From positions 39,027,999 through 39,063,588 of the forward strand of contig NC_068988.1 in assembly GCF_001194135.2 (NCBI RefSeq): a DNA stretch of 35,590 bases, in the 5' to 3' direction. Below, piece by piece: positions 1 through 31,245 of this stretch. The DNA comes from Octopus bimaculoides (lineage: Eukaryota). Numbering within the stretch: position 1 is the first letter of the stretch; the number at the start of each line of letters is the position of its first letter. The notes beneath the pieces were generated by a model. It did no database searches and was not told the DNA's origin. It saw only the letters and a list, made by a program, of their open reading frames with translations. A program made the position numbers and the translations under genes.

Positions 1-213
1 ATATATAGTAGGAATATACAAAAAACGAAGACAGGTGTGTAAACAACAAAAAGGTGTGTTAGTTTAACGTTCGGGAAGGTGAGAAATTCTTTTACGTTTC
101 GAGCCTACGCTTTTCATCAGAAAAGAACACGAGTAAATAAACACAGTGAGAATAAAAAAAGAAAGCTTCAGTAGCTAGCGGTCAATCATGTATATATATA
201 TATATATATATAT
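1..213 (-). mobile_element. Penelope-like terminal-repeat fragment (microsatellite-associated family) with a minimal hammerhead motif
   Basis: Same family as 2140-2400 and 10293-10440. The minus strand 88-125 reads CTTTT-CTGATGA-A-aagc-gtag-gctc-GAAA-CGTA-AAAGA, the CUGANGA(A)..GAAACGUH motif typical of Penelope pLTRs. Ends in (TA)n. Confidence 0.6.
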
Positions 214-883
214 AAATTAAGAAATGGAATTAAACTCAGGTGTTATTCAAATGTTTATACTTTCGATATATGTTTCGAAGAAAACATTGGTATTATTCCT
301 GAGGGAATGAAATGATGTAAAGCAATGTAATCATCTCGTCAGGGAAAAATGAGAAACAAACCATATCAATAAGCCATTTTAACCGAATGTGATTACCTGT
401 GTATATGATGAACGTGTTTATACTTGCAAACATTGGCAAAAACATACCTTTTGTTCCTATAAGTAGTTTCTACCAATCTATAAAATTCGACTTTTGATTG
501 TCTTCTTACATTTCATTTCCACTACATACATCTATTTACGCGCCTTTAAGCCTTATTTCCACTCATCTATCGCACTATATTTCTCCACTCTTAATTTTCT
601 GTTAATTTCCTTCTTTCTCCTTGTTGTCTTTTTCTAAATTGCCTTTAGCGGTTTTTAAAAAAAATAATAACTTATCAGCATTCACTTCATCATATACGCG
701 GTAATCACATTCGGTTAAAATGGCTTATTGATGTGGTTTGTTTCTCTTTTTTCCCTGACGAGATGATTACATTGCTTTACATCATTTTATTCCCTCGGTA
801 ATAGTACCAATGTTTTCTTCGAAACATATGTCGGAAGTATAAAGATTTGAATAACACCCACGTTTAACTCAATTTCCTAATTT
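214..883. mobile_element. Fold-back element with ~200-bp inverted repeats, each carrying a hammerhead-ribozyme motif (probable Penelope-like inverted pLTR derivative)
   Basis: 214-412 matches the reverse complement of 686-883 at roughly 90% by eye. The spacer is ~270 bp. Confidence 0.75.
751..836 (+). ncRNA. Type I hammerhead ribozyme motif, intact-looking
   Basis: Stem I is TTCC(751-754)/GGAA(833-836). Core CTGACGA is at 755-761. Stem II is gatgattacattg/caatgttttcttc (10 of 13 pairs). GAAA is at 821-824, followed by short palindromic stem III CATATG and cleavage triplet GTC at 830-832. Confidence 0.65.
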
Positions 884-1459: not shown

Positions 1460-1835
1460 TTACATTTTACTTGTTTCAGCCTCGATGGGTTTTATTCGAA
1501 CAAATCGACACCAGGACATGCTTTTCAAAGTCTGGCACTTATTCACTTGGTCACTTTACCGAACCTCTAAGTTAAGAGGGCGTAAATACAGCAACGCTGG
1601 TTATCAAGCGGTGGCGGCGGACAAACAGAGAGACAGATAGACAGACACACACACACAAACACGTACATATGCAAAGGGTTTCTTTCAGTTTCCGTCTACC
1701 AAATCCACCCGCAAGGCTTTGTTCGGCTCGAGGCTATAGTAGAGGACACTTGCCTAGGGTGCCATGCAGTGGGACTGAGCCCGGAACCATGTGGTTGCGA
1801 AGTAACCTTATTACCACACAAACACGTCTGCGCCT
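1460..1835 (-). mobile_element. tRNA-derived SINE, family B
   Basis: The reverse complement has the head ...aaccacatggttccgggctcagtcccactgcatggcaccc... and shares its body with copies at 9276-9700, 12840-13250, 14776-15125 and 29503-29890. Confidence 0.85.
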
Positions 1836-5280: not shown

Positions 5281-5346
5281 ATATTGACACCACGAAGTGG
5301 TTTACCACAGACCACACTTGCTCCTGTTGCTTTTAGTGACTATCAA

Positions 5347-5540
5347 AGCGGCGAAGTGACAGAGTCGTTGGTGCGTCGGACTAAATGCTTGGCGGCATTT
5401 CTTCCGGTTCTTTGCGCTCTGAGCTCAAATCCAACCCAACCGAGGTCACCTTTGCCTTTCATCATTTCGGAGTCGATAAAATAAGTACCAGTTAAGCACT
5501 GGGGTCGATGTCATCGACTTGGTCTCTCCCCTCAAAATTA
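5347..5540 (+). mobile_element. SINE family A copy
   Basis: ggcgaagtgacagagtcgttgg...gagctcaaatcc...gaggtcacctttgcctttcatc...gtcgataaaataagtaccagtt. It is the reverse complement of the many minus-strand copies. Confidence 0.85.
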
Positions 5541-6616: not shown

Positions 6617-6846
6617 TAATGGTTTCAAATTTTGGCACAAAGCCAGCAACTTCGGAAGAGGGGATAAGTTGATTGCATCGATCCCAGTGATCTACCAGTG
6701 CTTATTTTATAGAAAACTCCGAAAGGATGAAAGACAAAGTTGACCTCGACGGAATTTGAACTCAGAACGTAAAGAGGAACAAAATGCCGAAATACCGTTC
6801 AGCATTTTGCCCGGTGTGATAACGATTCTGCTAACTCGACGCCTTA
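6617..6846 (-). mobile_element. SINE family A copy
   Basis: ttttggcacaaagccagcaac...gaaaggatgaaagacaaagttgacctcgacggaatttgaactcagaacg...aacgattctgctaactcg. Confidence 0.85.
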
Positions 6847-7180
6847 AGTGTCTGTTATATTATGATTTCCATTCACGGTAACAATACTTGCGCTTTACTA
6901 AGGACATCTTAGGAATACTGGCCGGTGAATCGTGTGCTGTAGTTTAGTAACAGGTCCATTCCGATCGAAGAGACAAATGTAATTTTTGGCCATCCCATAT
7001 TTTCAAAGATAACTAAGGCAATAGAATTTCTAGATGATCAAGTGTCTGTATAAAAGCTTCCTTGTCGTTGTTCTTGTTTAGCTCCGGGTGAATACAGACA
7101 AAACTAATTTATTATTAAGGGAATTCCAACAATGACCATCCTGTATTTTAGTAAAGCTAATAGATTTAGGACAATATTAT

Positions 7181-7390
7181 TTTCTGTTATAAGCACAAGG
7201 CCAAAAATTTTGAGTGAGTAGGCTAGTCGATAACATAAACTCTAGTACTCAACTGGTACTTATTCTATCGACCCCGAATGGATGAAAGGCAAAGTAGACC
7301 ACGGCGGAATTTTAACTCAGAACGTAAAACCGGAAGAAAGCTACTAAGCATTTTGTCCGGCATGTTAACGATTCTGTCAGCTCGCCACTT
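7181..7390 (-). mobile_element. SINE family A copy
   Basis: Same diagnostic blocks as 6617-6846. Confidence 0.85.
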
Positions 7391-8544: not shown

Positions 8545-8702
8545 ACTGTTATGTGGTTAAAAAGCGCACATTGCAATCACGCAGTTTAGAGTTCAGTCCC
8601 ACTGCGTGGCAACTTGGTCCAGTGTCCTGTACTACAGCAGCTCCTGTACGACTAATGCCTTGTGAGTGAATTTGATAGACAGAAACTGTATGGAAAACTG
8701 TC

Positions 8703-9079: not shown

Positions 9080-9700
9080 GTATTTCACTTTGTTCCAGCT
9101 ACCGCTTGAGAACCGGTGTTGGTTTGTTTATGTTCCCGTAACTTAGCGATTCAGCAAAATAGACAGAAAGGAGAAGTGCTATATTTACAACACATGTACT
9201 GGAATCGATTTGTTTAGCCAAAAACCTTCAATATGATGCCCCAGCACGGCCGCAATGCAATGACCGAAGCAATGACCGTGGCTGCATGGTAAGAAGCTAC
9301 CTTCCTAAGCACATGGTTCTATGTTCAGTCCCACTACGTGGCACCTTGGGCAAGTGTCTTCTGCTATGTCCTCGGGCCAACCAAAGCCTCGTAAATGGAT
9401 TTAGTAGAGGGAAACTGAAAGAAGCCGGTCGTGTATATATATGTATATATACATATGTATATATTTATGTGTTTGTGTCTTTGTCTCTGTGTTTGTCCAC
9501 CCCACCATCGCTTGACAACCGATGTCGGTGTGTTTACGTCCCCGTAACTTAGCGGTTCGCCAAAAAGTGTCCGATAAAATAAGTATTAGGTTTGCAAAGA
9601 ATATGTCTTGGTGTCGATTTCTTCAACTAAAAAGCCTCTTTAAGGTGGTGCTCCAGCACGGCCACGGTCAAATGACTGAAACAAGTAAAAGAGTAAAAGA
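9080..9700 (+). mobile_element. Two tandem SINE family B copies (3' half at 9080-9270, full-length at 9276-9700)
   Basis: The block cgcttga(g/c)aaccg...cccgtaacttagcg...ccagcacggcc is repeated. The full copy has the head gtggctgcatggtaagaagc...gttcagtcccactacgtggcaccttgggcaagtgtc. Confidence 0.85.
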
Positions 9701-11350: not shown

Positions 11351-12107
11351 GATTCATATGTGAATAGATGCACATACTAGGTTGTACGCATCGACAGTTC
11401 AGCCGACGCAATTCAACCTCATATTTACAAATACTGGGAACTCTCTTAACTAAAAAATGTCTTGTCGTTTTGTTAGCGGCCGGTTTGAACTCTCTCAAGA
11501 ACTTCAATAAAACTCCAGCATGGCCGCAATCAAATGACTGAGACGAATAAAAAATAAAAGAATACATACATACGTGAGTACGCACACACGTGTATATCAA
11601 CATGTATACACGTGCATACATCATATATACGCACACATATGTATGTGTGTTTGTGTGTGTGAGTATGTTTTCATTTTCTGGCTTCAGTCATTAGACTCTT
11701 GTCATTCTAGTTCACTCTCTTCAAAGTTTTAGTTGATTGGTGAATTCCAGTATATTCTTAATTCGTCGAATCGCTATTGACGACAGTGTATCACCCNNNN
11801 NNNNNNNNNNNNNNNNNNNNNNNNNCCCCCCGCACACACACAGAGTTTGATCTGTAAGGAGTTGTACAATCCGAAGTTTAAGTAGAGGACTGCCCAAGGT
11901 TTCACGCAGTGTATAGAACTTCTGAACCACATGACATTGCTTGCGTTGAAAAATTGTTTTTTTTTCTCTTTTATTTTTTAAAATACGTATTAATTTTTAC
12001 TTTCGCATATTTCTTCACGGAATTTTGGTTTTGTAGTTAATATAAGTTTCTAAAATATATAATACAAAATAACTCTCTCTCTTTTTCTCTTTCACACACA
12101 TAGACTT

Positions 12108-12369
12108 TATTTCATTCACAGGCGAGATCCCACTACTGCTCGGCACGGAGTCTTTTGCCTGCTGCGTTTCCGCCCTGGACCGAAGCGACCCTCCTTAGAC
12201 AACCTGGTCCTGATGAGCTCCCTCTCCAGCACCATATTGATGCCGAGCTTAGCGCGGACACCCGATCGCCATAGAAGACCGACTACCAGGACTCCCATCC
12301 TCAAACCGGCCAACCAACCAACCAAGCTTCCGAGTAGCTGGATTACAGGAGCACGCCACAACTCCCAGC
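12108..12369 (-). pseudogene. 7SL: 7SL (SRP RNA) processed retrocopy, 3'-truncated, with 17-bp target-site duplication
   Basis: The minus strand reads GCTGGGAGTTGTGGCGTGCTCCTGTAATCCAGCTACTCGG...CGATCGGGTGTCCGCGCTAAGCTCGGCATCAATATGGTG...ACCAGGTTGTCTAAGGAGGG...CCAGGGCGGAAACGCAGCAGG...CAGTAGTGGGATCTCGCCTGTGAAT, matching metazoan 7SL block by block. It stops about 45 nt short of the canonical 3' end. The TSD TTCACACACA(T/C)AGACTT is at 12091-12107 and 12370-12386. Confidence 0.9.
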
Positions 12370-12839
12370 TTCACACACACAGACTTACTAACGCAAACTT
12401 ATTCATAAACATACACGCATGCTAGCTAAGTAATCGTTCATTAGACAGCTGGATACCCCAAAGGCAAGTCCTTATGACCTAGAAAGGTTTGTGAAGCGTG
12501 TTTGTGGAAACTTTCTAGAATGTCTTATACCAACGTACAACTAACGTTACAATTTGAATGACACATTAGATGTTCAATACGAATTACATTATGCGCGCGC
12601 ACACACACGCACGCACACACATCCACATAAATACATGCACATATACTTATACTTACATAAATCCACACAGACATGAAAACCTCTAACCTGAAACTTCGAA
12701 GTTACTGCTAACCTTTTATAAGTAAAAGTTGATAAATATATAACTTCATGTATGTATGTATGTATGTATGTATATATGTATGTATGCATTCATGTATGTA
12801 TGCATGTATGAATGTGTGTGCAGGTATATTTATAGTCTT

Positions 12840-13076: not shown

Positions 13077-13250
13077 ATATATACACGACGGGATTTTTTT
13101 CAGTTTCTGTCTACCAAGTCCACTTACAAGGCTTTGGTCAAGCTGAGGCTATCGTCGAAGACACTGGCCCATGGTGCCACGCAGTGGGACTGAACCTCGA
13201 ACCATGTGGTTGGCAAGCAAGTTTCTTATCACACAGCCACTCCTGCGCCT
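12840..13250 (-). mobile_element. SINE family B, full-length
   Basis: Reverse complement of the 9276-9700 copy, with an internal (CA)n. Confidence 0.85.
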
Positions 13251-14775: not shown

Positions 14776-15125
14776 AGGTGTTACTGTGTGGTAAAAAGCT
14801 TGCTTCCCTACCACATGGTTTGGGGCTTAGTCCTACAGCGTGGCACTTCGGGCCGACTAACGCCTTGTGAGTGGATTTGGTAGAAGGAAACTGAAAGAAG
14901 CCTGTCATATATATGTGTGTTCGTGTGTGTCTGCGTTTGTCCCCCGCCCCTACCGCTTGACAACCGGTGCTGTTGTATTTACGCCCCCGTAACATAGCTT
15001 TTCAGCTTAAGAGCGATAAGTACCGAGCTTTAAAAAAAATGTAATTATTGGGGTCGATACATTCGACTAAAAATTCTTCAAGGCGGTGCCCCAGTATAGC
15101 CGCAGTCTAATGACTGAAACAACTC
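14776..15125 (+). mobile_element. SINE family B occupying most of the putative last intron
   Basis: Head gtgttactgtgtggtaaaagcttgcttccctaccacatgg..., body and 3' end ggcggtgccccagtatagccgcagtc. Confidence 0.8.
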
Positions 15126-15161
15126 AAAAAAAAAAAAAGAGAAACCAAAAAGGAGACTTAC

Positions 15162-15524
15162 CCAATTGCACACTAAAACGAAGATAAGGCACCAAACAAA
15201 AACTCCTTGGAACATGGTCTGCCGATGTCTATTAGAAGAATTTTTGCTACGAACACCACCAACTTTTTGAACCGAGTTCGTCTGATCTCCATGGTTACTG
15301 CTCTGGTCAGACTCATTCCTTAGTTTTTCTTCTTCTTCTTTTCGCTTCCTTTCTTTGCGCTGTCTTCTTCGTTCTTCTCGCTCCAATTGGTTATTACCTT
15401 CGTCGCCAGGATATGGAGTCGTTCGTCTACGATTATTTCTTTGGTTTTGTCTCCTTCGATGCTGCTCATCATCAGAATCTTTCGTTTGGTCCAATATGTG
15501 GAATGTTCTGTTTTCGGCTTCACC
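15162..15524 (-). CDS. Charged Arg/Glu/Lys-rich exon ending in a hydrophobic stretch
   Basis: 363 nt, phase 0-0, and open from acceptor ttcaAG to a consensus donor TGG|GTAAGT. Encodes GEAENRTFHILDQ...EREERRRQRKERKRKEEEEK...SKNSSNRHRQTMFQGVFVWCLIFVLVCNW. Confidence 0.7.
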
Positions 15525-16857
15525 CTTGAAAGTATTAAATAATAATAGAACCAATATTAATACTAATATTAATATAAGAGTTGTTGTTATTTCTAACATA
15601 AGCAAATGGCTACAGATTTGTGGGGATTAAATTTATCATCGTTAATTGATTAGTAATTATTGTATCGATCCCAGAATGGATCTCAGACAAACCCACTCGG
15701 CGGAATTTGAACTGAGAATTTAAAGTGATGCAACTAATTACTGCAAGACATTTTGTCATTCCGTTCCACTGCCATGTTGATTAATAATAATGCTGTTAAT
15801 TAATAAACCATGGTTTCTGACATAGACAAAGGGCCTAAAAAGGCGGTGGGGGTTATGTAAGGTATGAAATCGATCCAAGAACTTGATTAGTTCCTACTTG
15901 GGAAGAATTTAAGACAAAGTCAATTCTGGTGAGATTTGAGGTCGGAACATAAAGGACCGAGTTTAAATATTGATACTCTGCCGATTTTTTCATGCACCAC
16001 CTTTAAAAGTGATTTGTAACAAGGCCTGAAATCTTGAAGGAAGCCAAATATATCAAGCCCAATACTTGACTGGTATTTTGTTTATCGACCTCGTAAAGAT
16101 AAGAAGTAAAATTGGTCTCAGCTGGATTTGAACTTAGAACGTAAAAAAGATGGAACGAACAGCACAAAACATTGTGTGCGATGTTTTAAACGATCTTACC
16201 ACATCCCCGTTCTTATCATTGTCACCCACCTTCATAATAATGGATTCAAATTTTGGCACAAGGCTAGCAAATTTCGAGGGTGGAGGCAAGTTGATTACAT
16301 TGACCCCTGTGTTCAAATGGTACTTATTTTATCGACCCCGAAAGGATGAAAGGCAAAGTCGACCTCGGTGGATTTTGAACTTAAAAACAAACGAAAGTGG
16401 GTATGTTATATTGACTTATATTTATTTTATATACCCCGAAAGACGAAAAGGATTTGAACGCAGAACCTGAAGGGCGGCCGGTTTAATTAGACACCGAGAG
16501 GTATTTAATATGTATACCTCAACTAATTACTCTACGGTACCCATCGTCCTGATAATGATTGTTAAACCTCTTGTAAAAGACACAGATGGACATAAGTCAT
16601 TTTACAGAAATATTATTTTAAGCAAAGAGACAAATTAAAGAAATTCGGATAAACTAAAGTGTTTAATGATAATGTTTACTATAATATTTTGTATCAATGA
16701 CATAGTATTCATAATAATATTATTTTTTTCTTGTTTTACATAACGAAATGATTATGTGAAAATTTAGCTTAATTGTACGCTACAGATAATACTAGAATTA
16801 AGGTGGTTTTATCTTTTAAGACTAGAATTAAGATTGTTTTAAGTTCTTTTATTTTGA

Positions 16858-17032: not shown

Positions 17033-20000
17033 CTAGATGGGACAGCAAAATTTACTGAGATGGTTGGTCAATAATTGACTAGTCCCATTTTTTATCGAAC
17101 CCCGGGGAATGAAAATTAAAATAGATTCTAGTTGAATTTGAACTTAAAGCATAATAACAGCAAGGACCGAAACTCTACTAACTGGGTAATTAATAATAAT
17201 AATAATCCCTTCTACTGTAGGTACAAGGCCTGAAATATTGGAGGAGGGGACTAGTCGATTACATCGACCCAGTGCTTAACTGCTACTTTATTTTATCGAC
17301 TCCGAACGGATGAAACGAAAAGTTGACCTTGGCGGAAAATGAACTCAGATCGCAAAAACTGACAAAATGTCACTAAGCAGTTTGCCCGGCGTGCTAACCA
17401 TTCTGCCAACTCGCCACCTTATTAAAAATACTATAACCATTTTACTTTAGGCACAGGGCGTGAAATTTGGCGGGAGGGGTAAGTCGATTACATTAACCCC
17501 CAGTACTCAACTGGTACTTAATTTATCGACCTCAAAAGATGAAAGGCAAAGTCGACCTCGGCAGAATTTGAACTCAGAACGTAGCAGCAGACGAAATACC
17601 GTTAAGCATTTCGTCCGGCGTGCTAACGATTCTGCTACCTCACTGCCTTAATAATAATAATAACGATTTCTGATATTGGATTCCAACCATTTGTAGAGAG
17701 TGCATTGTTGATTATATTGATCTCCGTACTTGATTCACACTTATTATATTGATACGCAGATTTGTCAAAAAAGAAGAGAGAAGAATGTTTTTGATAGAAT
17801 TTCAACTTGGAACGCACGGCAAGGTAAACTGCATTCTGTAACCATTTAAACCAGCCCTTCACTGACTCTCATATCCGTCAATTAAGAGAGTGAAATATAC
17901 ATTGAAGTGAAACTGATTGTTTAGCTGAATCGTAGAATAGCGGAATAATATTAGTGACAGTATTTGTTTCTGCTTTCCGAGTTGAAATTCTTCTGTATAT
18001 CAGTTTTGCTTTTCATTGTTTTGGGAGTGAGAAATAAAGAGCCAATCATCTACTAAATCGATTTTTCTCGTCTCACGGAATAAATTACGTTGTAATGTGA
18101 GAAGGATCAAGGAGACCACTCAGAACATCGAAAAATACAGAAATTAAGGGATGACGAATTGGCTGACCATTTCTTATAGAAAAAGAGAAAAATGCACTCC
18201 TCTACAAAAAAAAAAAAAAAAAAAAAANNNNNNNNNNNNNNNNNNNNNNNNNNNNNNNNNNNNNNNNNNNNNNNNNNNNNNNNNNNNNNNNNNAAAAAAA
18301 AAAAAAAAAAACGAAGCGTTTGGGTTCTTCATGTAATCAATAGTTGTATAAACCATTATATAGGAAACGAACTAAAAAATTACTATTGAGTCAGTAGCAG
18401 AATACATACATACATACATATATATATTGTGCTGTTGACACATAACTAATATAGACCAAAAGACAAACCAAATGAACGAATAAAAAAAATGAAATAAAAA
18501 TCAAACAAAATAAACTATACCTAAAGAAATCCAAATCCCCCCCCCCCAAGAAAACCCAAAGAAATCCAAATCCAAACCAAGAAGTTATTTAGAAGAGAAA
18601 AAGAGAAAACACACATAGAAAACCGCACAAACGCACACAAAACAGTACAATATGAATCTATTAACGATACTGATTTCTAAAACTTGGCACATGGTCATAG
18701 AATTCAGAATGAGGGTAGGTGGGGTGGGTATTGGCAATTCAATACATACTAATGATTCCTGTCGTTGACAATAAGGCTGTCACACATTTTTTTTTCTTTT
18801 GTGCTGGGTGAAGAGAAAGGAGTAGTCGATTTTACTGAACCCTAATTAACCACTGGTATTTCATTTTATCCACACTAGAATAGGCCTTCATCATATAGGC
18901 ACATGGCCTAAAATGTTGGAGAAGGGGTCAAGTCAATAACATTGACCCCGATACTCAACTACTACATATTGCATCGACCCCGAAAGGATGAAAGACAAAG
19001 TCAACCACGTGAGGATTTGAACTCCTAACGTAAAGATGGACGAAATGCCGCTCAAGATTTTGTCCGACGTGCTAAGGATTCTATCAGCTTGCCATATTAC
19101 CATTCACAAGAATGATGAACGTAAAAACGGACAATGTGTCACTCAACATTTTCTCCTGCGTGCTAAGGATTCTGTCAGCTCGCCGCTTTACCGTCACAAG
19201 AATAATATAAGGTCAAGTTGAGCATAGCAAGATTTAAACTCAGAACTTTAAAGAATACAACTAAATAAATTAAACAGCACTAGGCGTTTTGCATGTCGCT
19301 GTATCGGTTCTGCCATTCAATTTGCTTCATTACTAAATAGCAAGTCGTGAATTTAAGATGAGCGGAGTTAGTCGATTAAATCGACTCAAGTATTTAACTG
19401 GTACTTTTCTTTTCTCTATCCTACGAGGATAACACCCAAGTAGATCCCGGTGAGATTTGAATGTAAAAGAGCAGAACAAATACTGCAAGGTATTTTCCTC
19501 ACAGCATTTACGATTCAGTTGTCAAATAATTATTTTTAACCAAAGTACAAAGTTACACGTTTCGCAGCAGAGTTGTCGTTCTTTATATGCCCTGCTCCCG
19601 AGAATTTGATTGGTACCTTATTCCATAGAGTACAGAACAATGACAGCAGATATCTTGGTCTTATTATGAAACAATGTTAAGCACGGTGGATTAGCAGTAA
19701 CTCTGGGGTGACTGACAAGATGATTTGTGATGACTATTTTAAATCTCGAGTTCAAATCCTGCCGACGTCGACTTCAGGCTCGGTATAATAAATATTCTTT
19801 TCTATTCTTGGCACAAGGCCGGAAATTTGTGGGAGGGGGGCCAGTCGATTAGGTCAACCCCAGTACACAACTGGTACTTAATTTATCGACTCAGAAAAGA
19901 TGAAAGGCAAAGTCGACCTCAGCGGAATTTGAACTCAGAACGTAGCAGCAGACGAAATACCGTTAAGCATTTCGCCCGGCGTGCTAACGTTTCTGCCAGC

Positions 20001-20437
20001 TCGCCGCCTTTCAGTATAATAAATATCAAATCAGTGAAACATTGAAGTTGCTAATAATTTTTAGTGGTTTCATTTTCCTGAAGAGCGACTTAAATGCTTT
20101 AACTAGAGTGTATATTTGTTTTCTACTTATTTAATCAACTGCATAACGGCAGATAGTCACAGTTACCCTCAATGTAAAGGGGTGTATCAACAGCGGAGCA
20201 CCATACCGCAAGGTATGCTTGTTCGACACTCCGACATTTCATTCACACCTCGTGTGTGTGTGTATATGTGTGCGTGTGCGCGCAGTTATTAGTATACACT
20301 CTTGAAACAGTATCATATTAAAATACCTGTGATTATAAATCTTATAATGTATACATTAACATGGAACGGTACTGCATGTAATATTTTGTCACAGAGAAAA
20401 TTCTGGAAAAGCAACTGCCTTTTCACGTTTGTATATA

Positions 20438-21186
20438 CAGGGTGGGACAGAGAAGACGAACGTTTTTGAAATAATTATTTCTCAGCCCCAGTGGAAGAGA
20501 CATATGCCCGACAAGTACCATTCGGTCCGTGATGTCTTAGCATGTTTTCCTTTCAGGTGAAGCTATGGCACTGTGGACGATAGAACATCGTGTGTTTGCC
20601 TACGACAGTTACGTGAAGAATAACGAGTCTGTCACAGCAGTTCAGCGTGAGTTTCGGCGCCACTTCAACATTCACCGAAATCAGGCTGTTTCCTCCCGTA
20701 ATACAATCTTACGTTGGGTAAATGCACTTCGTACACGAAATAATTAAGGAATAGGAAACCAGTGGTGGCGCCACAAACGGTACGGACCCCGGAAAATGTG
20801 GAACGCGTTAGGCAAGCTTTGATACGGAGTCCAAATCGCTCTGCTCGGAGGCATTCCACTGAACTTGGTATCGATAATCGACCGGTAAGGCGTATTTTGT
20901 ATGAAGACCAGCATTTCCACACATAAAAATTGGTCATTGGACAATAGTTGAAACCATGGAACTATGCACAGAGCAATGCTGGAGAGATTGGAGGCTAATT
21001 TCCAAGAACACCTTCAGAAATGCATCAATGAAAACGGACATCACATGATAGATGTTGTTTTCAACACTTAATTTTAACAAATACTAATTCAATACAAACA
21101 TATTGATGCCAATAAAATTTGTTTGCAGCTAATATTAATGATTTTGTGAATTTTTCAAAAACGTCCGTTCGCTCTGTTCCGCCCTG
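20438..21186 (+). mobile_element. Internally deleted Tc1/mariner DNA transposon
   Basis: 34-bp TIRs CAGGGTGGGACAGAGAAGACGAACGTTTTTGAAA (6 mismatches between ends) and a TA duplication at 20436-37 and 21187-88. The N-terminal HTH MALWTIEHRVFAYDSYVKNNESVTAVQREFRRHFNI (DUF4817-like) and the C-terminus NFQEHLQKCINENGHHM are present. The catalytic core is deleted and the reading frame is broken. Confidence 0.9.
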
Positions 21187-21254
21187 TACTTTATAACTTT
21201 TACAGAAGCGATATTTTAATCTAGTGCTGTTCTAAGTACGAATATTAATATATA

Positions 21255-21997
21255 CCGTAAATCCTCGAGTATAATCCGCATTTTTTTCCTAAAATTTAAA
21301 GGTCAAAATCCCTAGTGCGTACTATATACGAGGTTAAAAATAACAAATATTTTCTAAGCGATGCCCTAGTCTCTATTTGCTGTCCGGCAATGTTTATTCA
21401 GACGCATTTTGTGATGTCGGGCGCGAAAATACCTTGAAAGCAATGAAGTCATAAAAGAATCATCCATAATTTGCAGTAATCAACATTTATTAAAATAAAA
21501 GTGTTGTATATCGTCTGCACTGGATGGTACTCAGGATGACGTTGTATGGAAAGATGAAATAAATGCAAGTGAATCTTCTGATGTTGACTATGAATCTGAC
21601 GGTGACGGAGATTTACACTATAATGATGCTGACATGTTTACGGAGGAACAAATGGAACAGTTATTTGATGCTGAAAGTGACGTTGAATTGGGAGGATTTG
21701 AATAAATGTTTTTGCTTATTCTTTTGTAACGGATAGTGATAAATATTTAAAGACAATTTACTTAATATTTATTTTTCACTGACGTTATTACTGTTATTTC
21801 TTTATTTTCTGCAAATTGCACAAAAAGCTACACGTTTGCATTATGTTTACAAACCAAGGACGTTATATAGACCTCCTTGACTCAAGTTAGAGAAGGGGTG
21901 CGTATTATACACAAGGTTTAGGTTTTTCAGAGGTACAGCCCCCTAAAAATCTCCTGCGTATTATACTCAAGGGCGGACTATACTCGAGGATTTACGG
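21255..21997 (+). mobile_element. Internally deleted pogo/Tc2-type DNA transposon
   Basis: 25-bp TIRs CCGTAAATCCTCGAGTATA(A/G)TCCGC, a TA duplication at 21253-54 and 21998-99, and subterminal TGCGTA(C/T)TATA repeats. A remnant of the acidic transposase C-terminus reads KCCISSALDGTQDDVVWKDE...FDAESDVELGGFE* (~21499-21705). Confidence 0.9.
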
Positions 21998-22492
21998 TAT
22001 GTAGACAGACACACAGACACACTTATATAGGAACATACACACACATACGCGACGGTCATCCGTAGATCTGTAGGATTAACAAGTTCCACTCACTAAGCCA
22101 TATTCGGCTCCATATTATGACATTATAAATTTACGCAAAGTGCCGCGCAGTTAAAAATCGTTATTAATAAATCCAATAGAAAATCATTATTATTATTTTT
22201 ATTTTTTACTAAAACAGCAACTCAGACTAGAAGCACAAACTCAGTGCACTAAATATATATAAGACAATCCAAAACAATTGCTTACGTAGTGAGTGCATCT
22301 AAAGTGCAAAAAAACTAACAAACGATCAGATTGACACTGCTGAATATGAAAGATGCAGCAGTTGTGCGAATGGAGATGATATAGTTAACAAAACAGCAAA
22401 CAACACTAGGCAGAGTGAAGGCAAACAATCAAATGAAAATCAATAAACATGACCACCATTTAAGGGGAGATAACATTCGATGCCAAACCTAC

Positions 22493-22531
22493 ATGCTTTC
22501 ATCATTTCTTGAATTGATAGGGACTGATAAT
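22493..22531 (-). CDS. Putative small exon (N)YQSLSIQEMMKA(L)
   Basis: 39 nt, phase 1-1. Acceptor cctgatcattttctatttAG, donor T|GTAGGT. In frame with both neighbouring candidate exons. Confidence 0.5.
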
Positions 22532-22706
22532 CTAAATAGAAAATGATCAGGAGGTAAAAGTGAACAGCGAAAAACATCAGCATAAAAGATCGAGTTTAGT
22601 TTCAGCTGATTCATGGCAAAGAAATAATTGTGAAGAGAAGAAAACAAAAAAGAAAAGAAAGAAAAACACATATGATATTAGTTATGTTCGTTGTTTTCGG
22701 CATATA

Positions 22707-22740
<34 letters not shown>

Positions 22741-23102
22741 NNNNNNNNNNNNNNNNNNNNNNNNNNNNNNNNNNNNNNNNNNNNNNNNNNNNNNNNNNNN
22801 NNNNNNNNNNNNNNNNNNNNNNNNNNNNNNNNNNNNNNNNNNNNNNNNNNNNNNNNNNNNNNNNNNNNNNNNNNNNNNNNNNNNNNNNNNNNNNNNNNNN
22901 NNNNNNNNNNNNNNNNNNNNNNNNNNNNNNNNNNNNNNNNNNNNNNNNNNNNNNNNNNNNNNNNNNNNNNNNNNNNNNNNNNNNNNNNNNNNNNNNNNNN
23001 NNNNNNNNNNNNNNNNNNNNNNNNNNNNNNNNNNNNNNNNNNNNNNNNNNNNNNNNNNNNNNNNNNNNNNNNNNNNNNNNNNNNNNNNNNNNNNNNNNNN
23101 NN

Positions 23103-23160
<58 letters not shown>

Positions 23161-23205
23161 ACACGCACACAAATGCCTCTGTGTGTATTGTGTTGGCGTC
23201 TTTAC

Positions 23206-23266
23206 TAATAATTTGGCTCAGCTGCGCATTATCTAAAGTTTCGTAGGCATAGGACGCGTTGAACAT
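23206..23266 (-). CDS. Putative small exon MFNASYAYETLDNAQLSQII(N)
   Basis: Acceptor atatgtcttctccattAG. Only phase 0 is open, matching the phase-0 end of the mucin exon. Donor A|GTAAAG. Confidence 0.5.
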
Positions 23267-23869
23267 CTAATGGAGAAGACATATCTTACAACCACGAAAC
23301 TTTAAGTAACGTGCACCCGGCTCAAACTGTTATCACACGTATGTAACACCAATCTAATGTGCTAAATGTTACTTTTATTGTATTCACACACACACACACA
23401 CACACACACCCTCTACAGGCGTATCGCTTGTAAAGTGTTGCTTCGAACACAGTATACAATTCACAATACATCTACTAGGCTTGACAAATATTTAGTAATT
23501 AAAATCTATTACCTGTGTACCGATTTTTTATCGATCTGGTATTAGTTCGATGCTAGTTCTATCATTCAATTAAGAAAGCTTATTTGAAACATTAAAGCTG
23601 GTTTGCTGCTTATAATTCCAGTTGTCCAGTCGGTCTTTATTTGGCTGTTATAACTAGCCAATTATTTCCCAGTTTGATGGATAATAACTGTAAACGAAGA
23701 CCGACTGACTGACTCACAGGAAGTATGAATTCTGAACTCTGAACACATCAGACAGCTTTGTTTTTTTAGTGTTAAACATAAGCATCCTGCATTGATTTGT
23801 CTATCAACCCAAGCAAACCTGAACGATGCAAAAGTTGCAGTAATGTCAATAGCTATGTAGTTATTTGAC

Positions 23870-23871
23870 TT

Positions 23872-23929
<58 letters not shown>

Positions 23930-24008
23930 ATCTCTCTCTCTATCTCTCTCTCTTTTTCTCTCTCTCTCTCTTTTTCTCTCTCTCTCCCTCCCTCCCCTCT
24001 CTCTCATA
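23870..24008. repeat. (TC)n microsatellite running into an assembly gap
   Basis: Direct inspection. Confidence 0.95.
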
Positions 24009-24542
24009 TNNNNNNNNNNNNNNNNNNNNNNNNNNNNNNNNNNNNNNNNNNNNNNNNNNNNNNNNNNNNNNNNNNNNNNNNNNNNNNNNNNNNNNNNNNN
24101 NNNNNNNNNNNNNNNNNNNNNNNNNNNNNNNNNNNNNNNNNNNNNNNNNNNNNNNNNNNNNNNNNNNNNNNNNNNNNNNNNNNNNNNNNNNNNNNNNNNN
24201 NNNNNNNNNNNNNNNNNNNNNNNNNNNNNNNNNNNNNNNNNNNNNNNNNNNNNNNNNNNNNNNNNNNNNNNNNNNNNNNNNNNNNNNNNNNNNNNNNNNN
24301 NNNNNNNNNNNNNNNNNNNNNNNNNNNNNNNNNNNNNNNNNNNNNNNNNNNNNNNNNNNNNNNNNNNNNNNNNNNNNNNNNNNNNNNNNNNNNNNNNNNN
24401 NNNNNNNNNNNNNNNNNNNNNNNNNNNNNNNNNNNNNNNNNNNNNNNNNNNNNNNNNNNNNNNNNNNNNNNNNNNNNNNNNNNNNNNNNNNNNNNNNNNN
24501 NNNNNNNNTATATATATATATATATATGAATTGAATTATAGA

Positions 24543-24673
24543 ATTCTTTAACAAGAACAGTATTGACAGCCACTGCAATGTTTCGGACAGCTAAGCCATC
24601 ATCGGACAGACTGTTGATGGCTTAACTGGCAGAAACATTGAAGTCACTGTCAACAACATTCTTAACAAAGAAT
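24543..24673 (-). ncRNA. Long intronic hairpin (candidate miRNA/hpRNA precursor or ADAR substrate)
   Basis: 63 gapless paired positions around a 5-nt loop (24606-24610): 48 Watson-Crick pairs plus 7 G.U on the minus strand, versus only 1 G.U on the plus strand. Confidence 0.6.
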
Positions 24674-24865
24674 GTTAAGTTTGTACTCTAAAAAATGTAT
24701 TGAGTAACAATTCACCTTAATGTACTATAGCTTAACATAAAAGCAAGCAAACACAATATCTATCTATCTATTTTCTATGTATGTATGTATGTATGTATGT
24801 ATGTATGTATGTATGTATGTATGTATGTATGCATGTATGTATGTATGTATGTATGTATGTATGTC

Positions 24866-24918
<53 letters not shown>

Positions 24919-26132
24919 AGGCACGTTGTGCGTGTGTCTGTAACATATATGCTTTTATAAGCTTGCATGTAATATCTAAACCATCATAGTATCTCTGCAC
25001 ATGAGTTTCTGTCTTTAGATGCGTTTGTATATGTATGCGTATGAACGTCTCTGTGTGCAAATACATACATATACTATATATATATATGTAAGCATATAGT
25101 AAAATAAGTATTCAGATAAAATCAGGTACTGGAAAAAGAAATGCACACGGTAGAATTGGATAAACCTGTGGTTCCAGCCTATAGCTGGTAAATATCAAAT
25201 GAGACATTCCGGTTGTGCTCAGCGGAAACCAACCCTATGAGTATTTAACGCTTAAGAGCTCGTCCAAAGCATGTGTTATGTTAAATTGTACGTTGTTTGT
25301 ATACTCTAGGCTATCCGACAAGCCGTAAATCCCCTTGGTGTATTATAATCAGGTTGATAATAACATACAATGGATAATTGTCAGCCACGCCCCTGCCGTA
25401 TTTTTGGGACATTCTCTTGTTTGTAAAATTACGTCTCATCTGATGAACACGGTGTTTTGTAACGGAGTAATGTTCTCATTCTTCTAATACGTAAGAAACA
25501 GCTGTAATGAACACACACACACACACACACATATATATATGTATATATATATATATTATNNNNNNNNNNNNNNNNNNNNNNNNNNNNNNNNNNNNNNNNN
25601 NNNNNNNNNNNNNNNNNNNNNNNNNNNNNNNNNNNNNNNNNNNNNNNNNNNNNNNNNNNNNNNNNNNNNNNNNNNNNNNNNNNNNNNNNNNNNNNNNNNN
25701 NNNNNNNNNNNNNNNNNNNNNNNNNNNNNNNNNNNNNNNNNNNNNNNNNNNNNNNNNNNNNNNNNNNNNNNNNNNNNNNNNNNNNNNNNNNNNNNNNNNN
25801 NNNNNNNNNNNNNNNNNNNNNNNNNNNNNNNNNNNNNNNNNNNNNNNNNNNNNNNNNNNNNNNNNNNNNNNNNNNNNNNNNNNNNNNNNNNNNNNNNNNN
25901 NNNNNNNNNNNNNNNNNNNNNNNNNNNNNNNNNNNNNNNNNNNNNNNNNNNNNNNNNNNNNNNNNNNNNNNNNNNNNNNNNNNNNNNNNNNNNNNNNNNN
26001 NNNNNNNNNNNNNNNNNNATATTTATGATGATAAATAATTTTACCGATAAAGGTTTTTTTCATACTGAACTACTTGGCAAAATTGTTAATTATTAATTCT
26101 ATTATTAATTGACGATTCTCTGCCCTTATTCT

Positions 26133-26171
<39 letters not shown>

Positions 26172-26456
26172 CTCCGAATACATAGCAAACATCCTGTCTC
26201 TTTAATAGATCTGTGCACTATTCCAAACATACGCATCATACCATCACAGTCCTGCCACGCACACTAGTGAAATGTGAATATTATAACACCGTAACGTATT
26301 ATGTAACCTGATGAGGTTTCGTCTGCACTGTGGAGTGCATTCGATTCCATTATATCATTCCCCATCAACTAAGGAGCAATGCAGAATTAAACGGAAACGA
26401 TCATCATGCTAAATAAAGCTTACAGTACACTCTGTCTTCCCTATCAGTTATTTAAA

Positions 26457-26487
<31 letters not shown>

Positions 26488-26597
26488 TGTATGTATGTAT
26501 GTATGTATGTATGTGTGTATGTATGTATGTATGCATGTATGTGTGTGTTCGTAACCGTCTATGTCACTGAATATAAGGAAATGAATTAAGGGAATAC

Positions 26598-27046
26598 CTT
26601 GGATGTCGATGTTTCTTTGGTCGCTTTTTTGCTTGGGATGGTTACGTAAAATGGTGGGTTAGTTCTACGCGTTGTAGTAGCAGTAGTAGTGGTAGTTGGA
26701 ATAGTAGTAGTAGTGGACTTGGGGGTAGTGGTAGTAGTAGTAGGAGGAGGAGTAGTAGGAGTAATAGTTGTGGCCTCAGTTGGGGTGGTAATGGTGGTAG
26801 AAGTGGTGGCAGATGAAGTAGAAGTTGTAGTAGGGATGATGAATGGGGTTGTAGTGGTAGTAGCAGTGGTTTTAGCACCAAATGTTGCTCCCTTAAATGT
26901 GGTCAAAATGGTGTTCGTTGCAGCGGTGGTGGTTATAGCAGCGCGTGAGCGAACAGTCGAACGACGTTTCGGTCGCTGGGTTCGCATCGGCTTCACCTGG
27001 TTATCAGTTGACACTGGTGGTACAACGGTAATTGGTTTGAGATCGT
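26598..27046 (-). CDS. Thr/Pro-rich mucin-like stalk exon
   Basis: 449 nt. Acceptor ttattatttcAG, phase 1 from the LDLa exon (G|AC GAT CTC = DDLK). Encodes DDLKPITVVPP...RPKRR...TTTTTPKSTTTTIPTTTTT...KETSTSK. Donor AAG|GTATTC (phase 0). Confidence 0.85.
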
Positions 27047-27048
27047 CT

Positions 27049-27050
27049 GA

Positions 27051-27082
<32 letters not shown>

Positions 27083-27150
27083 TAATAATAATAATAATAA
27101 TAATAATTATAGTAGTAGTAATAATAATAATAATAAGAAGAAGAATAAGA
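27049..27150. repeat. (AAT)n microsatellite abutting the mucin-exon splice acceptor
   Basis: Direct inspection. Confidence 0.95.
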
Positions 27151-27159
27151 ATAATAAAG

Positions 27160-27880
27160 AAGGTTTTAAACTTTAGCACAAGACCAGCAATACCAGGGGA
27201 GGGGTAAGTCGATTACATCTACTCCAGTGTTCAACTGATACTTAATTTATCGACCCTGATAGAATGAAAGGCAAAGTCGACCTCGGCGGAATTTGAACTC
27301 AGAACGGTCAAGACGAAGAAATGTCGCTAAGCATTTTGCCCGGCGTGCTAACGTTTCTGTCTTATAAAGTAGGAGGAAAATTCTTTTTCTACTCTAGGCA
27401 CAAGGCCAGAAATTTTGGGGGAAGGGGCCACTCGAATAGATCGACCCCATTACGTAACTGGTACTTAATTTATCGACGCCGAAAGGATGAAAGGCAAAGT
27501 CAACCTCAGCGGAATTTGAACTCAGAACCGTAAAGACGAAGAACTGTTATTAAGCATTTTGCCCGGCGTGCTAACGATTCTGTCAGCTCACCATAATAAA
27601 AAATAAATATAATAATGATGATGACGACGACGACGGCGATGTTTTGAATATTGGCATAAGACCAATAATTTCGATGGAAGAAGGAAATCAATTACATCGA
27701 CCGCCATAATTCGCCTGGTGCTCGTTCCCCTCCTTCACTTTTTCTTTTACTTGACTGGAAGTTTATTTTATCGAGGCCTGAAGGGTGAAAACCAAAGTTT
27801 ACTTTAGTGAGAATTGAACTCAGAATACATATAGTTGTTAGTGACTAACACATAATAACATTTTGTTCACCACTGTAACA
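27160..27880 (-). mobile_element. Three consecutive SINE family A copies (about 27160-27362, 27383-27592, and a degenerate one at 27640-27880)
   Basis: The diagnostic block gaaaggcaaagtc(g/a)acctc(g/a)gcggaatttgaactcagaac occurs twice, with a diverged third copy. Confidence 0.85.
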
Positions 27881-29890: not shown

Positions 29891-30150
29891 AAAGATATAT
29901 ATATATATATATTGATAGAAAGGACAACAAAAGAAAGAAAGAGACCTCGATATTATGTAAATAGAGGAATTTATCTGTAAAAATATGTGATACTTATTCG
30001 GTAGCCATGATNNNNNNNNNNNNNNNNNNNNNNNNNNNNNNNNNNNNNNNNNNNNNNNNNNNNNNNNNNNNNNNNNNNNNNNNNNNNNNNNNNNNNNNNN
30101 NNNNNNNNNNNNNNNNNNNNNNNNNNNNNNNNNNNNNNNNNNNNNNNNNN

Positions 30151-31112: not shown

Positions 31113-31245
31113 TCTTTTCTACTCTAGGTACAAGGCCCGAAATTTTGGGGGAGGGGGCCAGTCGATTAGATCGACTCCAGTATGCAACTGGTATTTAATT
31201 TATCGACCCCGAAAGATGAAAGGCAAAGTCGACCTTGGCGGGATA
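31113..31245 (-). mobile_element. SINE family A, truncated copy
   Basis: ctctaggtacaaggcccgaaattttgggggagggggccagtcgattagatcgac...gaaaggcaaagtcgaccttggcgg. Confidence 0.85.

What the first reader, a model, noticed from the sequence alone, without database searches (positions are those of the whole stretch)
12091..12386. 7SL RNA retrocopy with a 17-bp TSD: an Alu-precursor-like event in a probable cephalopod genome
Seen: ~256 nt of recognisable 7SL starting exactly at the 5' G, ending after CCTGTGAAT plus 6 extra nt (GAAATA), with no poly(A), and flanked by TTCACACACA(T/C)AGACTT. Established: LINE-mediated 7SL retroposition gave rise to Alu and B1 in mammals, and truncated 7SL pseudogenes are known in human. 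Inference: a resident LINE mobilised SRP RNA in trans and inserted it into a CA-rich target. The copy keeps the 5' Alu-domain (internal Pol III promoter) region and the S domain but cannot form the terminal helix. If many copies share this 3' end, it would be a 7SL-derived SINE family outside mammals. It also provides a proxy for the species' 7SL sequence.
Basis: partly seen in the sequence, partly recalled or inferred. Interest (0 to 1): 0.7.

Follow-up and report, generated by a model that had tools for sequence, protein, structure and literature searches.

The report
Truncated SRP-RNA retrocopy in an octopus genome
This is one dead, reverse-transcribed copy of the cell's signal-recognition-particle RNA (7SL) pasted into repeat-rich octopus DNA; it is a clean example of a known kind of genomic fossil, and nothing found here shows it to be a new Alu-like repeat family.

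Summary
On the minus strand, window 12369..12114 is nucleotides 1-256 of a metazoan SRP (7SL) RNA (Rfam RF00017, 173.5 bits, E 9e-46). It starts at the 5' G and ends at CCTGTGAAT. Six filler bases (GAAATA) follow, and a 16/17 direct repeat (AAGTCTRTGTGTGTGAA) abuts both ends. The last ~43 nt of 7SL, the -30 TATA box and the T-run terminator are missing; three full-length invertebrate 7SL genes retrieved here have all three.

A translated-ORF search links the sequence to Octopus bimaculoides (93% identity to a 60-aa "protein" that is really another 7SL locus).

Best reading: a solitary processed pseudogene made by LINE-type target-primed reverse transcription. Its closest known kind is the "tailless retropseudogene" (5'-complete, 3'-truncated, no oligo(A), TSDs), so far described in therians, anole and maize.

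The "Alu-precursor/SINE" reading is not supported:
- The copy lacks the 3' Alu-domain strand that all SINE1 families keep.
- It has no LINE-derived tail.
- It is single in a window that holds 11 and 5 copies of two tRNA-type SINEs.

The genome-wide copy count could not be tested with these tools. 7SL SINEs outside mammals are already known (hagfish). Interest is low to moderate.

The parts
12370..12386 (-). 5' target-site duplication (sense orientation AAGTCTGTGTGTGTGAA), abutting 7SL nucleotide 1
   Evidence: It is 16/17 identical to 12091-12107, and the motif occurs nowhere else in the window.
12114..12369 (-). 7SL (SRP RNA) nucleotides 1-256: the 5' Alu-domain helices 2-4, the 5' strand of helix 5, the whole S domain (helices 6 and 8), and the 3' strand of helix 5 up to CCUGUGAAU
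   Evidence: Rfam RF00017, 173.5 bits. Alignment A1 with the full-length genes L001-L003 shares columns continuously only up to T256. GC is 58% against 37% for the window, and CpG o/e is 0.80 (measured on 12110-12369).
12108..12113 (-). 6-nt A-rich filler GAAATA between the truncated 7SL and the 3' TSD; no poly(A)
   Evidence: It is not 7SL sequence, since the relatives continue with AGGC/AGGU. It is not part of the duplicated target either.
12091..12107 (-). 3' target-site duplication (AAGTCTATGTGTGTGAA)
12066..12069 (-). First TTTT downstream of the copy. If the internal Pol III promoter fired, transcription would probably stop here, giving a ~304-nt read-through RNA (inference).
   Evidence: Sequence. 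A fold of 12369..12066 is no better than shuffled sequence (z -0.44).

Best explanation
This is a solitary processed pseudogene (retrocopy) of the octopus signal-recognition-particle RNA.

Proposed steps:
1. A 7SL RNA molecule was used in trans as a template by the endonuclease/reverse transcriptase of a resident LINE (inferred).
2. The enzyme nicked a CA-rich target, and reverse transcription began about 43 nt from the RNA's 3' end. It started either on an internal A-rich stretch (GUGAAU, next to a conserved asymmetric loop) or on a truncated RNA carrying a few extra A-rich bases. It then ran to the RNA's 5' end (inferred).
3. A staggered second-strand cut 17 bp away produced the target-site duplication (shown by the sequence).

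The product lacks the gene's upstream TATA, its terminator and the 3' strand of the Alu domain. It therefore cannot make a functional SRP RNA, and it is not built like an Alu/B1-type SINE. By form it belongs with the 'tailless retropseudogenes' of small RNAs. The partner LINE is not identified. RTE-clade LINEs are the ones reported as recently active in Octopus.
For: (1) Identity: Rfam Metazoa_SRP, 173.5 bits, E 9e-46.

(2) RNA origin:
- The copy starts exactly at +1.
- Three full-length invertebrate 7SL genes (L001-L003, 258-271 bits) have TATA at -30 and a T-run right after nt 299. The window copy has neither.

(3) Truncation:
- Similarity to L001-L003 stops at T256.
- The 304-nt would-be transcript folds with z -0.44 and forms no helix-5 rod. 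L001 folds into the rod with z -2.59.

(4) TPRT hallmark:
- A 16/17 direct repeat abuts both ends. It is unique in the window (expected 0.06), against a background of 4.7e-5 per 17-mer pair.
- Resident SINE copies in the same window have 9-14-bp TSDs, so LINE machinery has worked in this genome.

(5) Host: the best hit of the internal ORF is an Octopus bimaculoides entry. An RTE LINE shows insertion polymorphism in O. bimaculoides (PMC9115989).

(6) Precedent:
- 7SL pseudogenes made by LINE TPRT are known.
- Tailless retropseudogenes are 5'-complete, 3'-truncated, lack oligo(A) and are TSD-flanked (PMC5322556).
Against: - The responsible LINE is unknown, and no reverse-transcriptase ORF lies in the window.
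- The target (GT/AAGTCT) matches the L1-type TT/AAAA nick site only weakly, and it does not start with the T described for RTE-related insertions.
- The 6-nt filler is explained by none of the sub-mechanisms.
- The octopus source gene was not retrieved. The exact breakpoint, the age, and any microhomology between target and RNA therefore could not be measured.
- Free-RNA folding of relatives does not clearly show the breakpoint as single-stranded.
- Raw reads could not be inspected.
Confidence: 0.85

Rival explanations
1. It is one member of a 7SL-derived SINE (SINE1-like) or 'tailless SINE' family in octopus. Many copies would share the nt-256 breakpoint, transcribed from the retained internal Pol III promoter and re-mobilised.
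For: - The copy keeps the region that carries the A and B boxes in human 7SL (6-15 and 76-86).
- The retained helices are nearly intact and CpG is retained, so it is not very old.
- O. bimaculoides has at least one other 7SL-like locus. It differs at 4 of 60 codons, two of them at positions invariant in alignment A1, so it is probably also a decayed copy.
- Preferred breakpoints are typical of tailless retropseudogenes, which can reach hundreds of copies.
Against: - There is only one copy in 35.6 kb, where two tRNA-type SINEs have 11 and 5 copies.
- It has no LINE-derived tail or microsatellite tail. The resident SINEs end in ...GAAAAGAATAT/(ATT)n.
- It lacks 7SL 267-299, which all known SINE1 families retain and which closes the SRP9/14-binding Alu domain.
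- It lacks the upstream TATA seen in real genes.
- No other copies were retrievable. This last point is uninformative, because no cephalopod genome is searchable here.
Confidence: 0.08
2. It is a chimeric retrocopy made by template switching. Reverse transcription started on the 3' end of a LINE or SINE RNA, copied only ~6-8 nt (GAAAUA[AA]), and then jumped onto 7SL RNA at nt 256. The process would be like U6/L1 chimeras, with a minimal 3' part.
For: - The filler GAAATA resembles the ends of resident SINE tails (…TAGAAAAGAATA, …CAGAAAATAATAT).
- LINE-1 chimeras with 7SL and other small RNAs are documented.
Against: - Six A-rich bases are too few for a statistical match.
- In known chimeras the LINE part is usually tens to hundreds of nt long.
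- The 3' end of the partner LINE is unknown.
Confidence: 0.1
3. It is a functional or variant SRP RNA gene, or an assembly artefact that clipped a real gene.
For: - The Rfam hit is well above the gathering score, and cmscan nominally reports 1-299.
- A TTTT lies at about the distance where a terminator would be.
- The assembly is a gapped draft.
Against: - The 3' 43 nt are replaced by unrelated sequence that cannot pair with the 5' strand of helix 5.
- It scores about 90-100 bits below full-length relatives.
- There is no TATA at -30.
- The direct repeats flank it precisely.
- There are no Ns within about 265 bp of either junction.
Confidence: 0.03
4. It is a DNA-level event: a fragment of a 7SL gene moved by a DNA transposon, a Helitron or double-strand-break repair.
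For: Filler bases and short repeats can also arise during break repair.
Against: - The 5' end coincides exactly with the transcription start, and no promoter DNA came along.
- A 17-bp duplication is typical of LINE TPRT and longer than the usual DNA-transposon TSDs (own knowledge).
- No terminal inverted repeats were noted at the ends in the window-wide repeat scan (only the 25 longest pairs shown) or on reading the sequence.
Confidence: 0.03

Closest known systems
Tailless retropseudogenes of small RNAs (Schmitz et al. 2004; Noll et al. 2015, PMC5322556)
   Same: - It derives from an abundant small RNA and is complete at the 5' end.
- It is truncated at an internal position next to an A-rich stretch.
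- It has no oligo(A) tail and is flanked by TSDs, implying TPRT in trans.
   Different: - That class was described for therian mammals, the anole and a few maize cases, and was attributed to 'relaxed' L1. Here the host is an octopus and the LINE is unknown.
- This copy carries a 6-nt filler.
- The L1-type target motif TT/WAAAA is matched only weakly (GT/AAGT).
- 7SL itself is not named among the source RNAs in the abstract or the sections of that paper read here.
Human 7SL pseudogenes (Ullu & Weiner 1984), marsupial P7SL_MD, and guinea-pig 7SL retrocopies
   Same: These are retrocopies of SRP RNA inserted by LINE machinery and flanked by direct repeats (details of the 1984 paper are from memory, as the text was not available).
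   Different: P7SL_MD is a full-length 7SL plus poly(A) and reached more than 12,000 copies. The octopus copy is 3'-truncated, has no tail and is single here.
SINE1: Alu, B1, Tu types, and hagfish SINE1-1_EBu (Kojima 2020, PMC7245038)
   Same: The 5' part is 7SL-derived and includes the internal Pol III promoter region. In hagfish the partner is an RTE-clade LINE, the clade also active in Octopus.
   Different: - SINE1 elements delete the S domain and keep both strands of the Alu domain (1-63, 76-83, 267-299).
- They carry poly(A) or an RTE-derived tail and are multi-copy.
- This element keeps the S domain, lacks 257-299, has no tail and is single-copy in the data available.
snRNA/LINE-1 chimeric retrocopies (U6/L1 and the newer 7SL/L1 cases)
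   Same: A small RNA is copied to its exact 5' end after the reverse transcriptase engages it internally. TSDs are 9-19 bp.
   Different: Those carry a recognisable LINE 3' segment and poly(A). Here there are only 6 unassignable bases.

Membership tests
Metazoan SRP (7SL) RNA, functional gene | Full-length ~299-nt RNA whose 5' and 3' strands form helix 5 and close the Alu domain | tested here: not met
   Only nt 1-256 are present. The fold shows no rod, z -0.44, against -2.59 for L001. It scores 173.5 bits against 258-271.
Metazoan SRP (7SL) RNA, functional gene | Pol III context: an upstream TATA-like box near -30 and a T-run terminator directly after the 3' end | tested here: not met
   Both are present in L001, L002 and L003 and absent in the window copy.
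Processed (retro)pseudogene made by LINE TPRT | The copy begins at the transcript's +1 and lacks promoter DNA | tested here: met
Processed (retro)pseudogene made by LINE TPRT | Target-site duplication of about 7-20 bp directly flanking the insert | tested here: met
   17 bp, 16/17 identical, unique in the window.
Processed (retro)pseudogene made by LINE TPRT | Empty (pre-insertion) site in a relative or another haplotype | not testable with these tools
   No cephalopod genome or read set is searchable here. Exact-protein look-ups for window ORFs returned nothing.
Tailless retropseudogene | 5'-complete, 3'-truncated, with no oligo(A) tail | tested here: met
   nt 1-256, followed only by GAAATA.
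Tailless retropseudogene | Breakpoint at an internal single-stranded, A-rich region of the source RNA | tested here: inconclusive
   - The breakpoint follows GUGAAU.
- It lies just 3' of the site opposite the conserved unpaired CGA (model positions 99-101 in the CS line).
- The predicted unpaired probability is low in L001 and L003 and high in L002.
Tailless retropseudogene | Complementarity between the target site and the RNA at the breakpoint; L1-type nick site TT/WAAAA | tested here: inconclusive
   - The target is GT/AAGTCT, a weak match.
- The octopus 7SL 3' sequence is unknown.
- Predicting it from the 5' strand gives ...GAAUAGAAGAC..., which shares AAG-C with the TSD start. This is inference only.
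SINE1 (7SL-derived SINE) | Multi-copy family with a shared structure | not testable with these tools
   There is one copy in the window. One other 7SL-like locus is inferred in O. bimaculoides, but its DNA could not be retrieved.
SINE1 (7SL-derived SINE) | Retention of both Alu-domain strands (human 7SL 1-63, 76-83, 267-299) with loss of the S domain | tested here: not met
   The S domain is present and 257-299 are absent. The criterion comes from PMC7245038.
SINE1 (7SL-derived SINE) | 3' tail recognised by the partner LINE: poly(A) for L1, or a LINE-derived or microsatellite tail for RTE | tested here: not met
   There are only 6 nt (GAAATA). The resident SINEs have ...GAAAAGAATAT/(ATT)n tails.

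The most novel reading that the evidence does not exclude
The copy is one of many octopus 7SL retrocopies sharing the nt-256 breakpoint. That would be a 'tailless' 7SL family produced by an invertebrate, probably RTE-clade, LINE with relaxed template choice. It would extend tailless retroposition, so far tied to therian and anole L1, to molluscs, and would give a third independent case of 7SL amplification.
Probability: 0.1. Interest if true: 0.6.

Novelty: new member of a known kind. Interest (0 to 1): 0.3.

Why it matters
As it stands, this is a well-preserved example of a cellular small RNA retrocopied in a cephalopod. It shows that at least one octopus LINE can act in trans on a non-LINE, non-polyadenylated RNA.

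Retrocopies of this tailless kind have so far been reported only from mammals, the anole and maize. A genome-wide census of such copies in Octopus would indicate how 'relaxed' its LINEs are. This bears on current claims about retrotransposon activity in octopus brains.

The copy also gives a 256-nt proxy for the octopus SRP RNA sequence. It does not by itself bear on the origin of Alu-like elements.

Tried and rejected
(1) A second 7SL fragment in the window. cmscan in E-value mode and blastn of the copy against the window found none; the other Rfam hits are microsatellite noise.

(2) Exact-protein look-ups to find the source contig or other copies. The 81-aa ORF inside the copy, a 175-aa nearby ORF and P0001 were all not on record.

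(3) Metagenome scan with the lineage-specific GGAAGC(TTGG)4 motif. It returned 5 loci, none of them 7SL.

(4) Scans of prokaryote genomes and viral contigs with a 27-mer near the breakpoint found 0 hits, as expected.

(5) A Pfam scan of 9 ORFs, looking for a LINE reverse transcriptase or any gene, found nothing above the cut-offs.

(6) The text of Ullu & Weiner 1984 was not available, so details of the human truncated pseudogenes rest on memory.

(7) A literature check for the micrococcal-nuclease or hinge site at about nt 250 of 7SL found no usable passage. The idea that the breakpoint matches that site remains recollection.

(8) The 'real gene' and 'DNA-level transfer' readings were considered and rejected; see the rival explanations.

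(9) A second homology search with other reading frames was not run. The expected yield did not justify the cost.

Full report
**What is there**

The window is a gapped draft of a eukaryotic genome. It has nine N-runs, 37% GC, and very many microsatellites.

Rfam's gathering-threshold scan gives a single hit: Metazoa_SRP (RF00017) on the minus strand, 12369..12082, at 173.5 bits (gathering score 70) and E 8.9e-46.

Read on the minus strand, the locus is:
- AAGTCTGTGTGTGTGAA, 12386..12370
- GCTGGGAG…GCCTGTGAAT, 12369..12114, 256 nt
- GAAATA, 12113..12108
- AAGTCTATGTGTGTGAA, 12107..12091
- then AGAGAAAAAGAGAGAGAGTTATTTTG

**Is it more than chance?**

- The 17-mer, with up to two mismatches allowed, occurs only at these two places in the window. 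The expectation from shuffles is 0.06.
- The window is rich in CA repeats, so I also measured an empirical background. Among 9.6 million 17-mer pairs spaced 150-450 bp apart, 4.7e-5 agree at 16 of 17 positions or better.
- At this copy's own spacing of 279 bp, the other such pairs lie at 23105-23116 and 29893-29895. The first run falls in the (AC)n array at 23103-23171.
- Here, one repeat copy abuts nucleotide 1 of the RNA.

**Truncation**

cmscan nominally aligns model positions 1-299. After position ~255 the alignment is gaps and non-canonical pairs.

To obtain real comparators I translated the 81-aa ORF that lies inside the copy and searched the protein collection. This works because gene callers sometimes call ORFs across 7SL genes.
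- Three hits were traced to contigs: L001, L002 and L003.
- Each contains a full-length SRP RNA scoring 258-271 bits.
- In a MAFFT alignment, the window copy shares a continuous run of conserved columns with them up to T256 and only scattered matches after that. The relatives continue with AGGCGG…/AGGUAU… and end in a T-run.

So about 43 nt are missing. These are the 3' strand of the proximal part of helix 5, which closes the Alu domain.

Folding agrees with this:
- The would-be Pol III transcript, running to the first TTTT at 12069..12066 (304 nt), folds no better than shuffled sequence (z -0.44). Its helix-5 5' strand mispairs locally.
- L001 folds into the expected rod (z -2.59).

**Gene or retrocopy?**

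All three real genes carry a TATA-like box at about -30 and a T-run immediately after nt 299. The window copy has neither.

Only the transcribed region was copied, starting exactly at +1, and it sits between duplicated target bases. That is the signature of reverse transcription of the RNA and insertion by target-primed reverse transcription.

No assembly gap is within about 265 bp of the junctions. A clipped real gene is therefore unlikely, although reads could not be checked.

**Host and resident machinery**

The best protein hit is UniRef A0A0L8HPT1, an 'uncharacterized protein' of Octopus bimaculoides: 60 aa, 93% identity. It is evidently a gene model laid over another 7SL locus.
- It differs from the window copy at four codons.
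- Two of the implied base changes fall on columns that are invariant in the four-sequence alignment (C123 and G167).
- That locus is therefore probably itself a decayed copy. Its DNA could not be retrieved.

The window holds two tRNA-type SINE families.
- One has 11 matching stretches at 74-88% identity, or 10 copies beyond the query, plus a short fragment. The other has 5.
- The first family ends in …GGCCTTGTGCCTAGAGTAGAAAAGAATAT or (ATT)n.
- Its TSDs are 9-14 bp: GTCCTAAAT, ATATTTATTATAC and ATTATTTATTTATT.

LINE-driven retroposition has clearly been frequent in this genome. An RTE-clade LINE is reported as polymorphic, and so recently active, in O. bimaculoides (PMC9115989).

**Mechanism**

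Shown:
- an RNA-derived insert
- a 17-bp staggered-cut duplication
- a 3' end at 7SL nt 256
- six unassigned A-rich bases

Inferred: a LINE endonuclease/reverse transcriptase acted in trans.

The closest described process is the one proposed for 'tailless retropseudogenes'. There, the nicked target DNA primes internally on an A-rich, accessible stretch of a small RNA. This gives 5'-complete, 3'-truncated, tail-less, TSD-flanked copies (PMC5322556).

The breakpoint here follows GUGAAU. It lies just 3' of the position opposite a conserved unpaired CGA in the 5' strand (CS lines). Thermodynamic predictions for relatives do not consistently show it as unpaired.

From memory, about nt 250 is also the micrococcal-nuclease cut that separates the S and Alu domains. 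I could not verify this in the library.

Two sub-variants cannot be separated from internal priming without more data:
- A truncated 7SL RNA carrying a short non-templated A-rich tail.
- A brief start on a SINE or LINE tail followed by a template switch. The filler GAAATA resembles the resident SINE's …GAAAAGAATA end, but six bases prove nothing.

Separating them needs the octopus source gene and the 3' ends of the LINEs.

**Comparison with known kinds, and novelty**

- 7SL pseudogenes made by LINE machinery have been known since 1984 (cited).
- Mass-amplified 7SL retrocopies exist in marsupials and guinea pig, and a true 7SL-headed SINE mobilised by RTE exists in hagfish (PMC7245038).
- The premise '7SL-derived SINE outside mammals would be new' is therefore out of date.
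- The 'Alu-precursor' analogy fails structurally. SINE1 elements keep 1-63, 76-83 and 267-299 and lose the S domain. This copy keeps the S domain and lacks 257-299.
- It is best filed as a new member of a known kind: small-RNA retropseudogene, tailless type.
- The mildly interesting point is the host. That type has been reported only from therians, the anole and maize, and was attributed to relaxed L1.

**What could not be done**

No cephalopod genome, read set or repeat library is searchable with these tools. As a result the copy count, the shared-breakpoint test, the empty site, the source gene and the read support all remain open. The metagenome, prokaryote and viral scans were uninformative.

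**Verdict**

- Observation: confirmed.
- Interpretation: partly supported. It is a retrocopy; an Alu-like or SINE nature is not shown.
- Interest: 0.3.

Noticed in passing
window 5345-5519 (+); 6623-6845, 7180-7386, 16245-16381, 17210-17420, 17450-17649, 19798-20040, 27173-27359, 27385-27592, 31115-31244 (all -); short fragment 19147-19189 (-): An abundant tRNA-type SINE gives 11 matching stretches at 74-88% identity to one copy (10 copies beyond the query, plus a short fragment). The head is GGCGAGCTGGCAGAATCGTTAGCACGCCGGGC, the core is GAGGTCGACTTTGCCTTTCATCCTTTCGGGGTCGATAAA, and the tail is …GTGCCTAGAGTAGAAAAGAATAT or (ATT)n. TSDs are 9-14 bp. Two head-to-tail pairs share the same ~225-bp spacing (17210-17649 and 17173-27592 region: 27173-27592), which suggests either a dimeric form or repeated insertion into the tail microsatellite.
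   Followed up: partly
window 1676-1835 (+), 13086-13250 (+), 8591-8688 (-), 9278-9423 (-), 14776-14854 (-): A second short interspersed repeat has 5 copies at 78-80% identity. It contains GCCACGCAGTGGGACTGAACC, which looks like the reverse complement of a tRNA T-arm. It is often directly adjacent to CA/TA microsatellites.
   Followed up: partly
window 212-397 and 700-885: A 186-nt inverted repeat is 92% complementary, with its arms 302 nt apart. It matches neither SINE family. It may be a foldback or MITE-like element, or two inverted copies of an unclassified repeat.
   Followed up: no
window 15078-15605 (-): This is the longest gap-free ORF not built from simple repeats in the window, at 175 aa. 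It has hydrophobic ends and a highly charged R/E/K-rich middle. It has only sub-threshold Pfam hits and is not on record as a called protein. It could be an exon or a chance ORF.
   Followed up: partly
UniRef A0A0L8HPT1_OCTBM (P0001); also P0012 (Araneus ventricosus) and P0014 (Ixodes pacificus): Several database 'hypothetical proteins' are translations of SRP RNA genes or pseudogenes, that is, mis-annotated non-coding RNA loci. Searching with a translated ORF from inside a 7SL retrieved them, along with full-length 7SL genes in metagenome and SRA contigs (L001-L003).
   Followed up: yes
window 12066-12069 relative to 12369: The first TTTT after the truncated copy falls 301-304 nt from +1. This is almost exactly where a real 7SL terminator would lie (alignment A1). 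It is probably coincidence, but it may be why cmscan reports a nominally full-length 1-299 alignment.
   Followed up: partly
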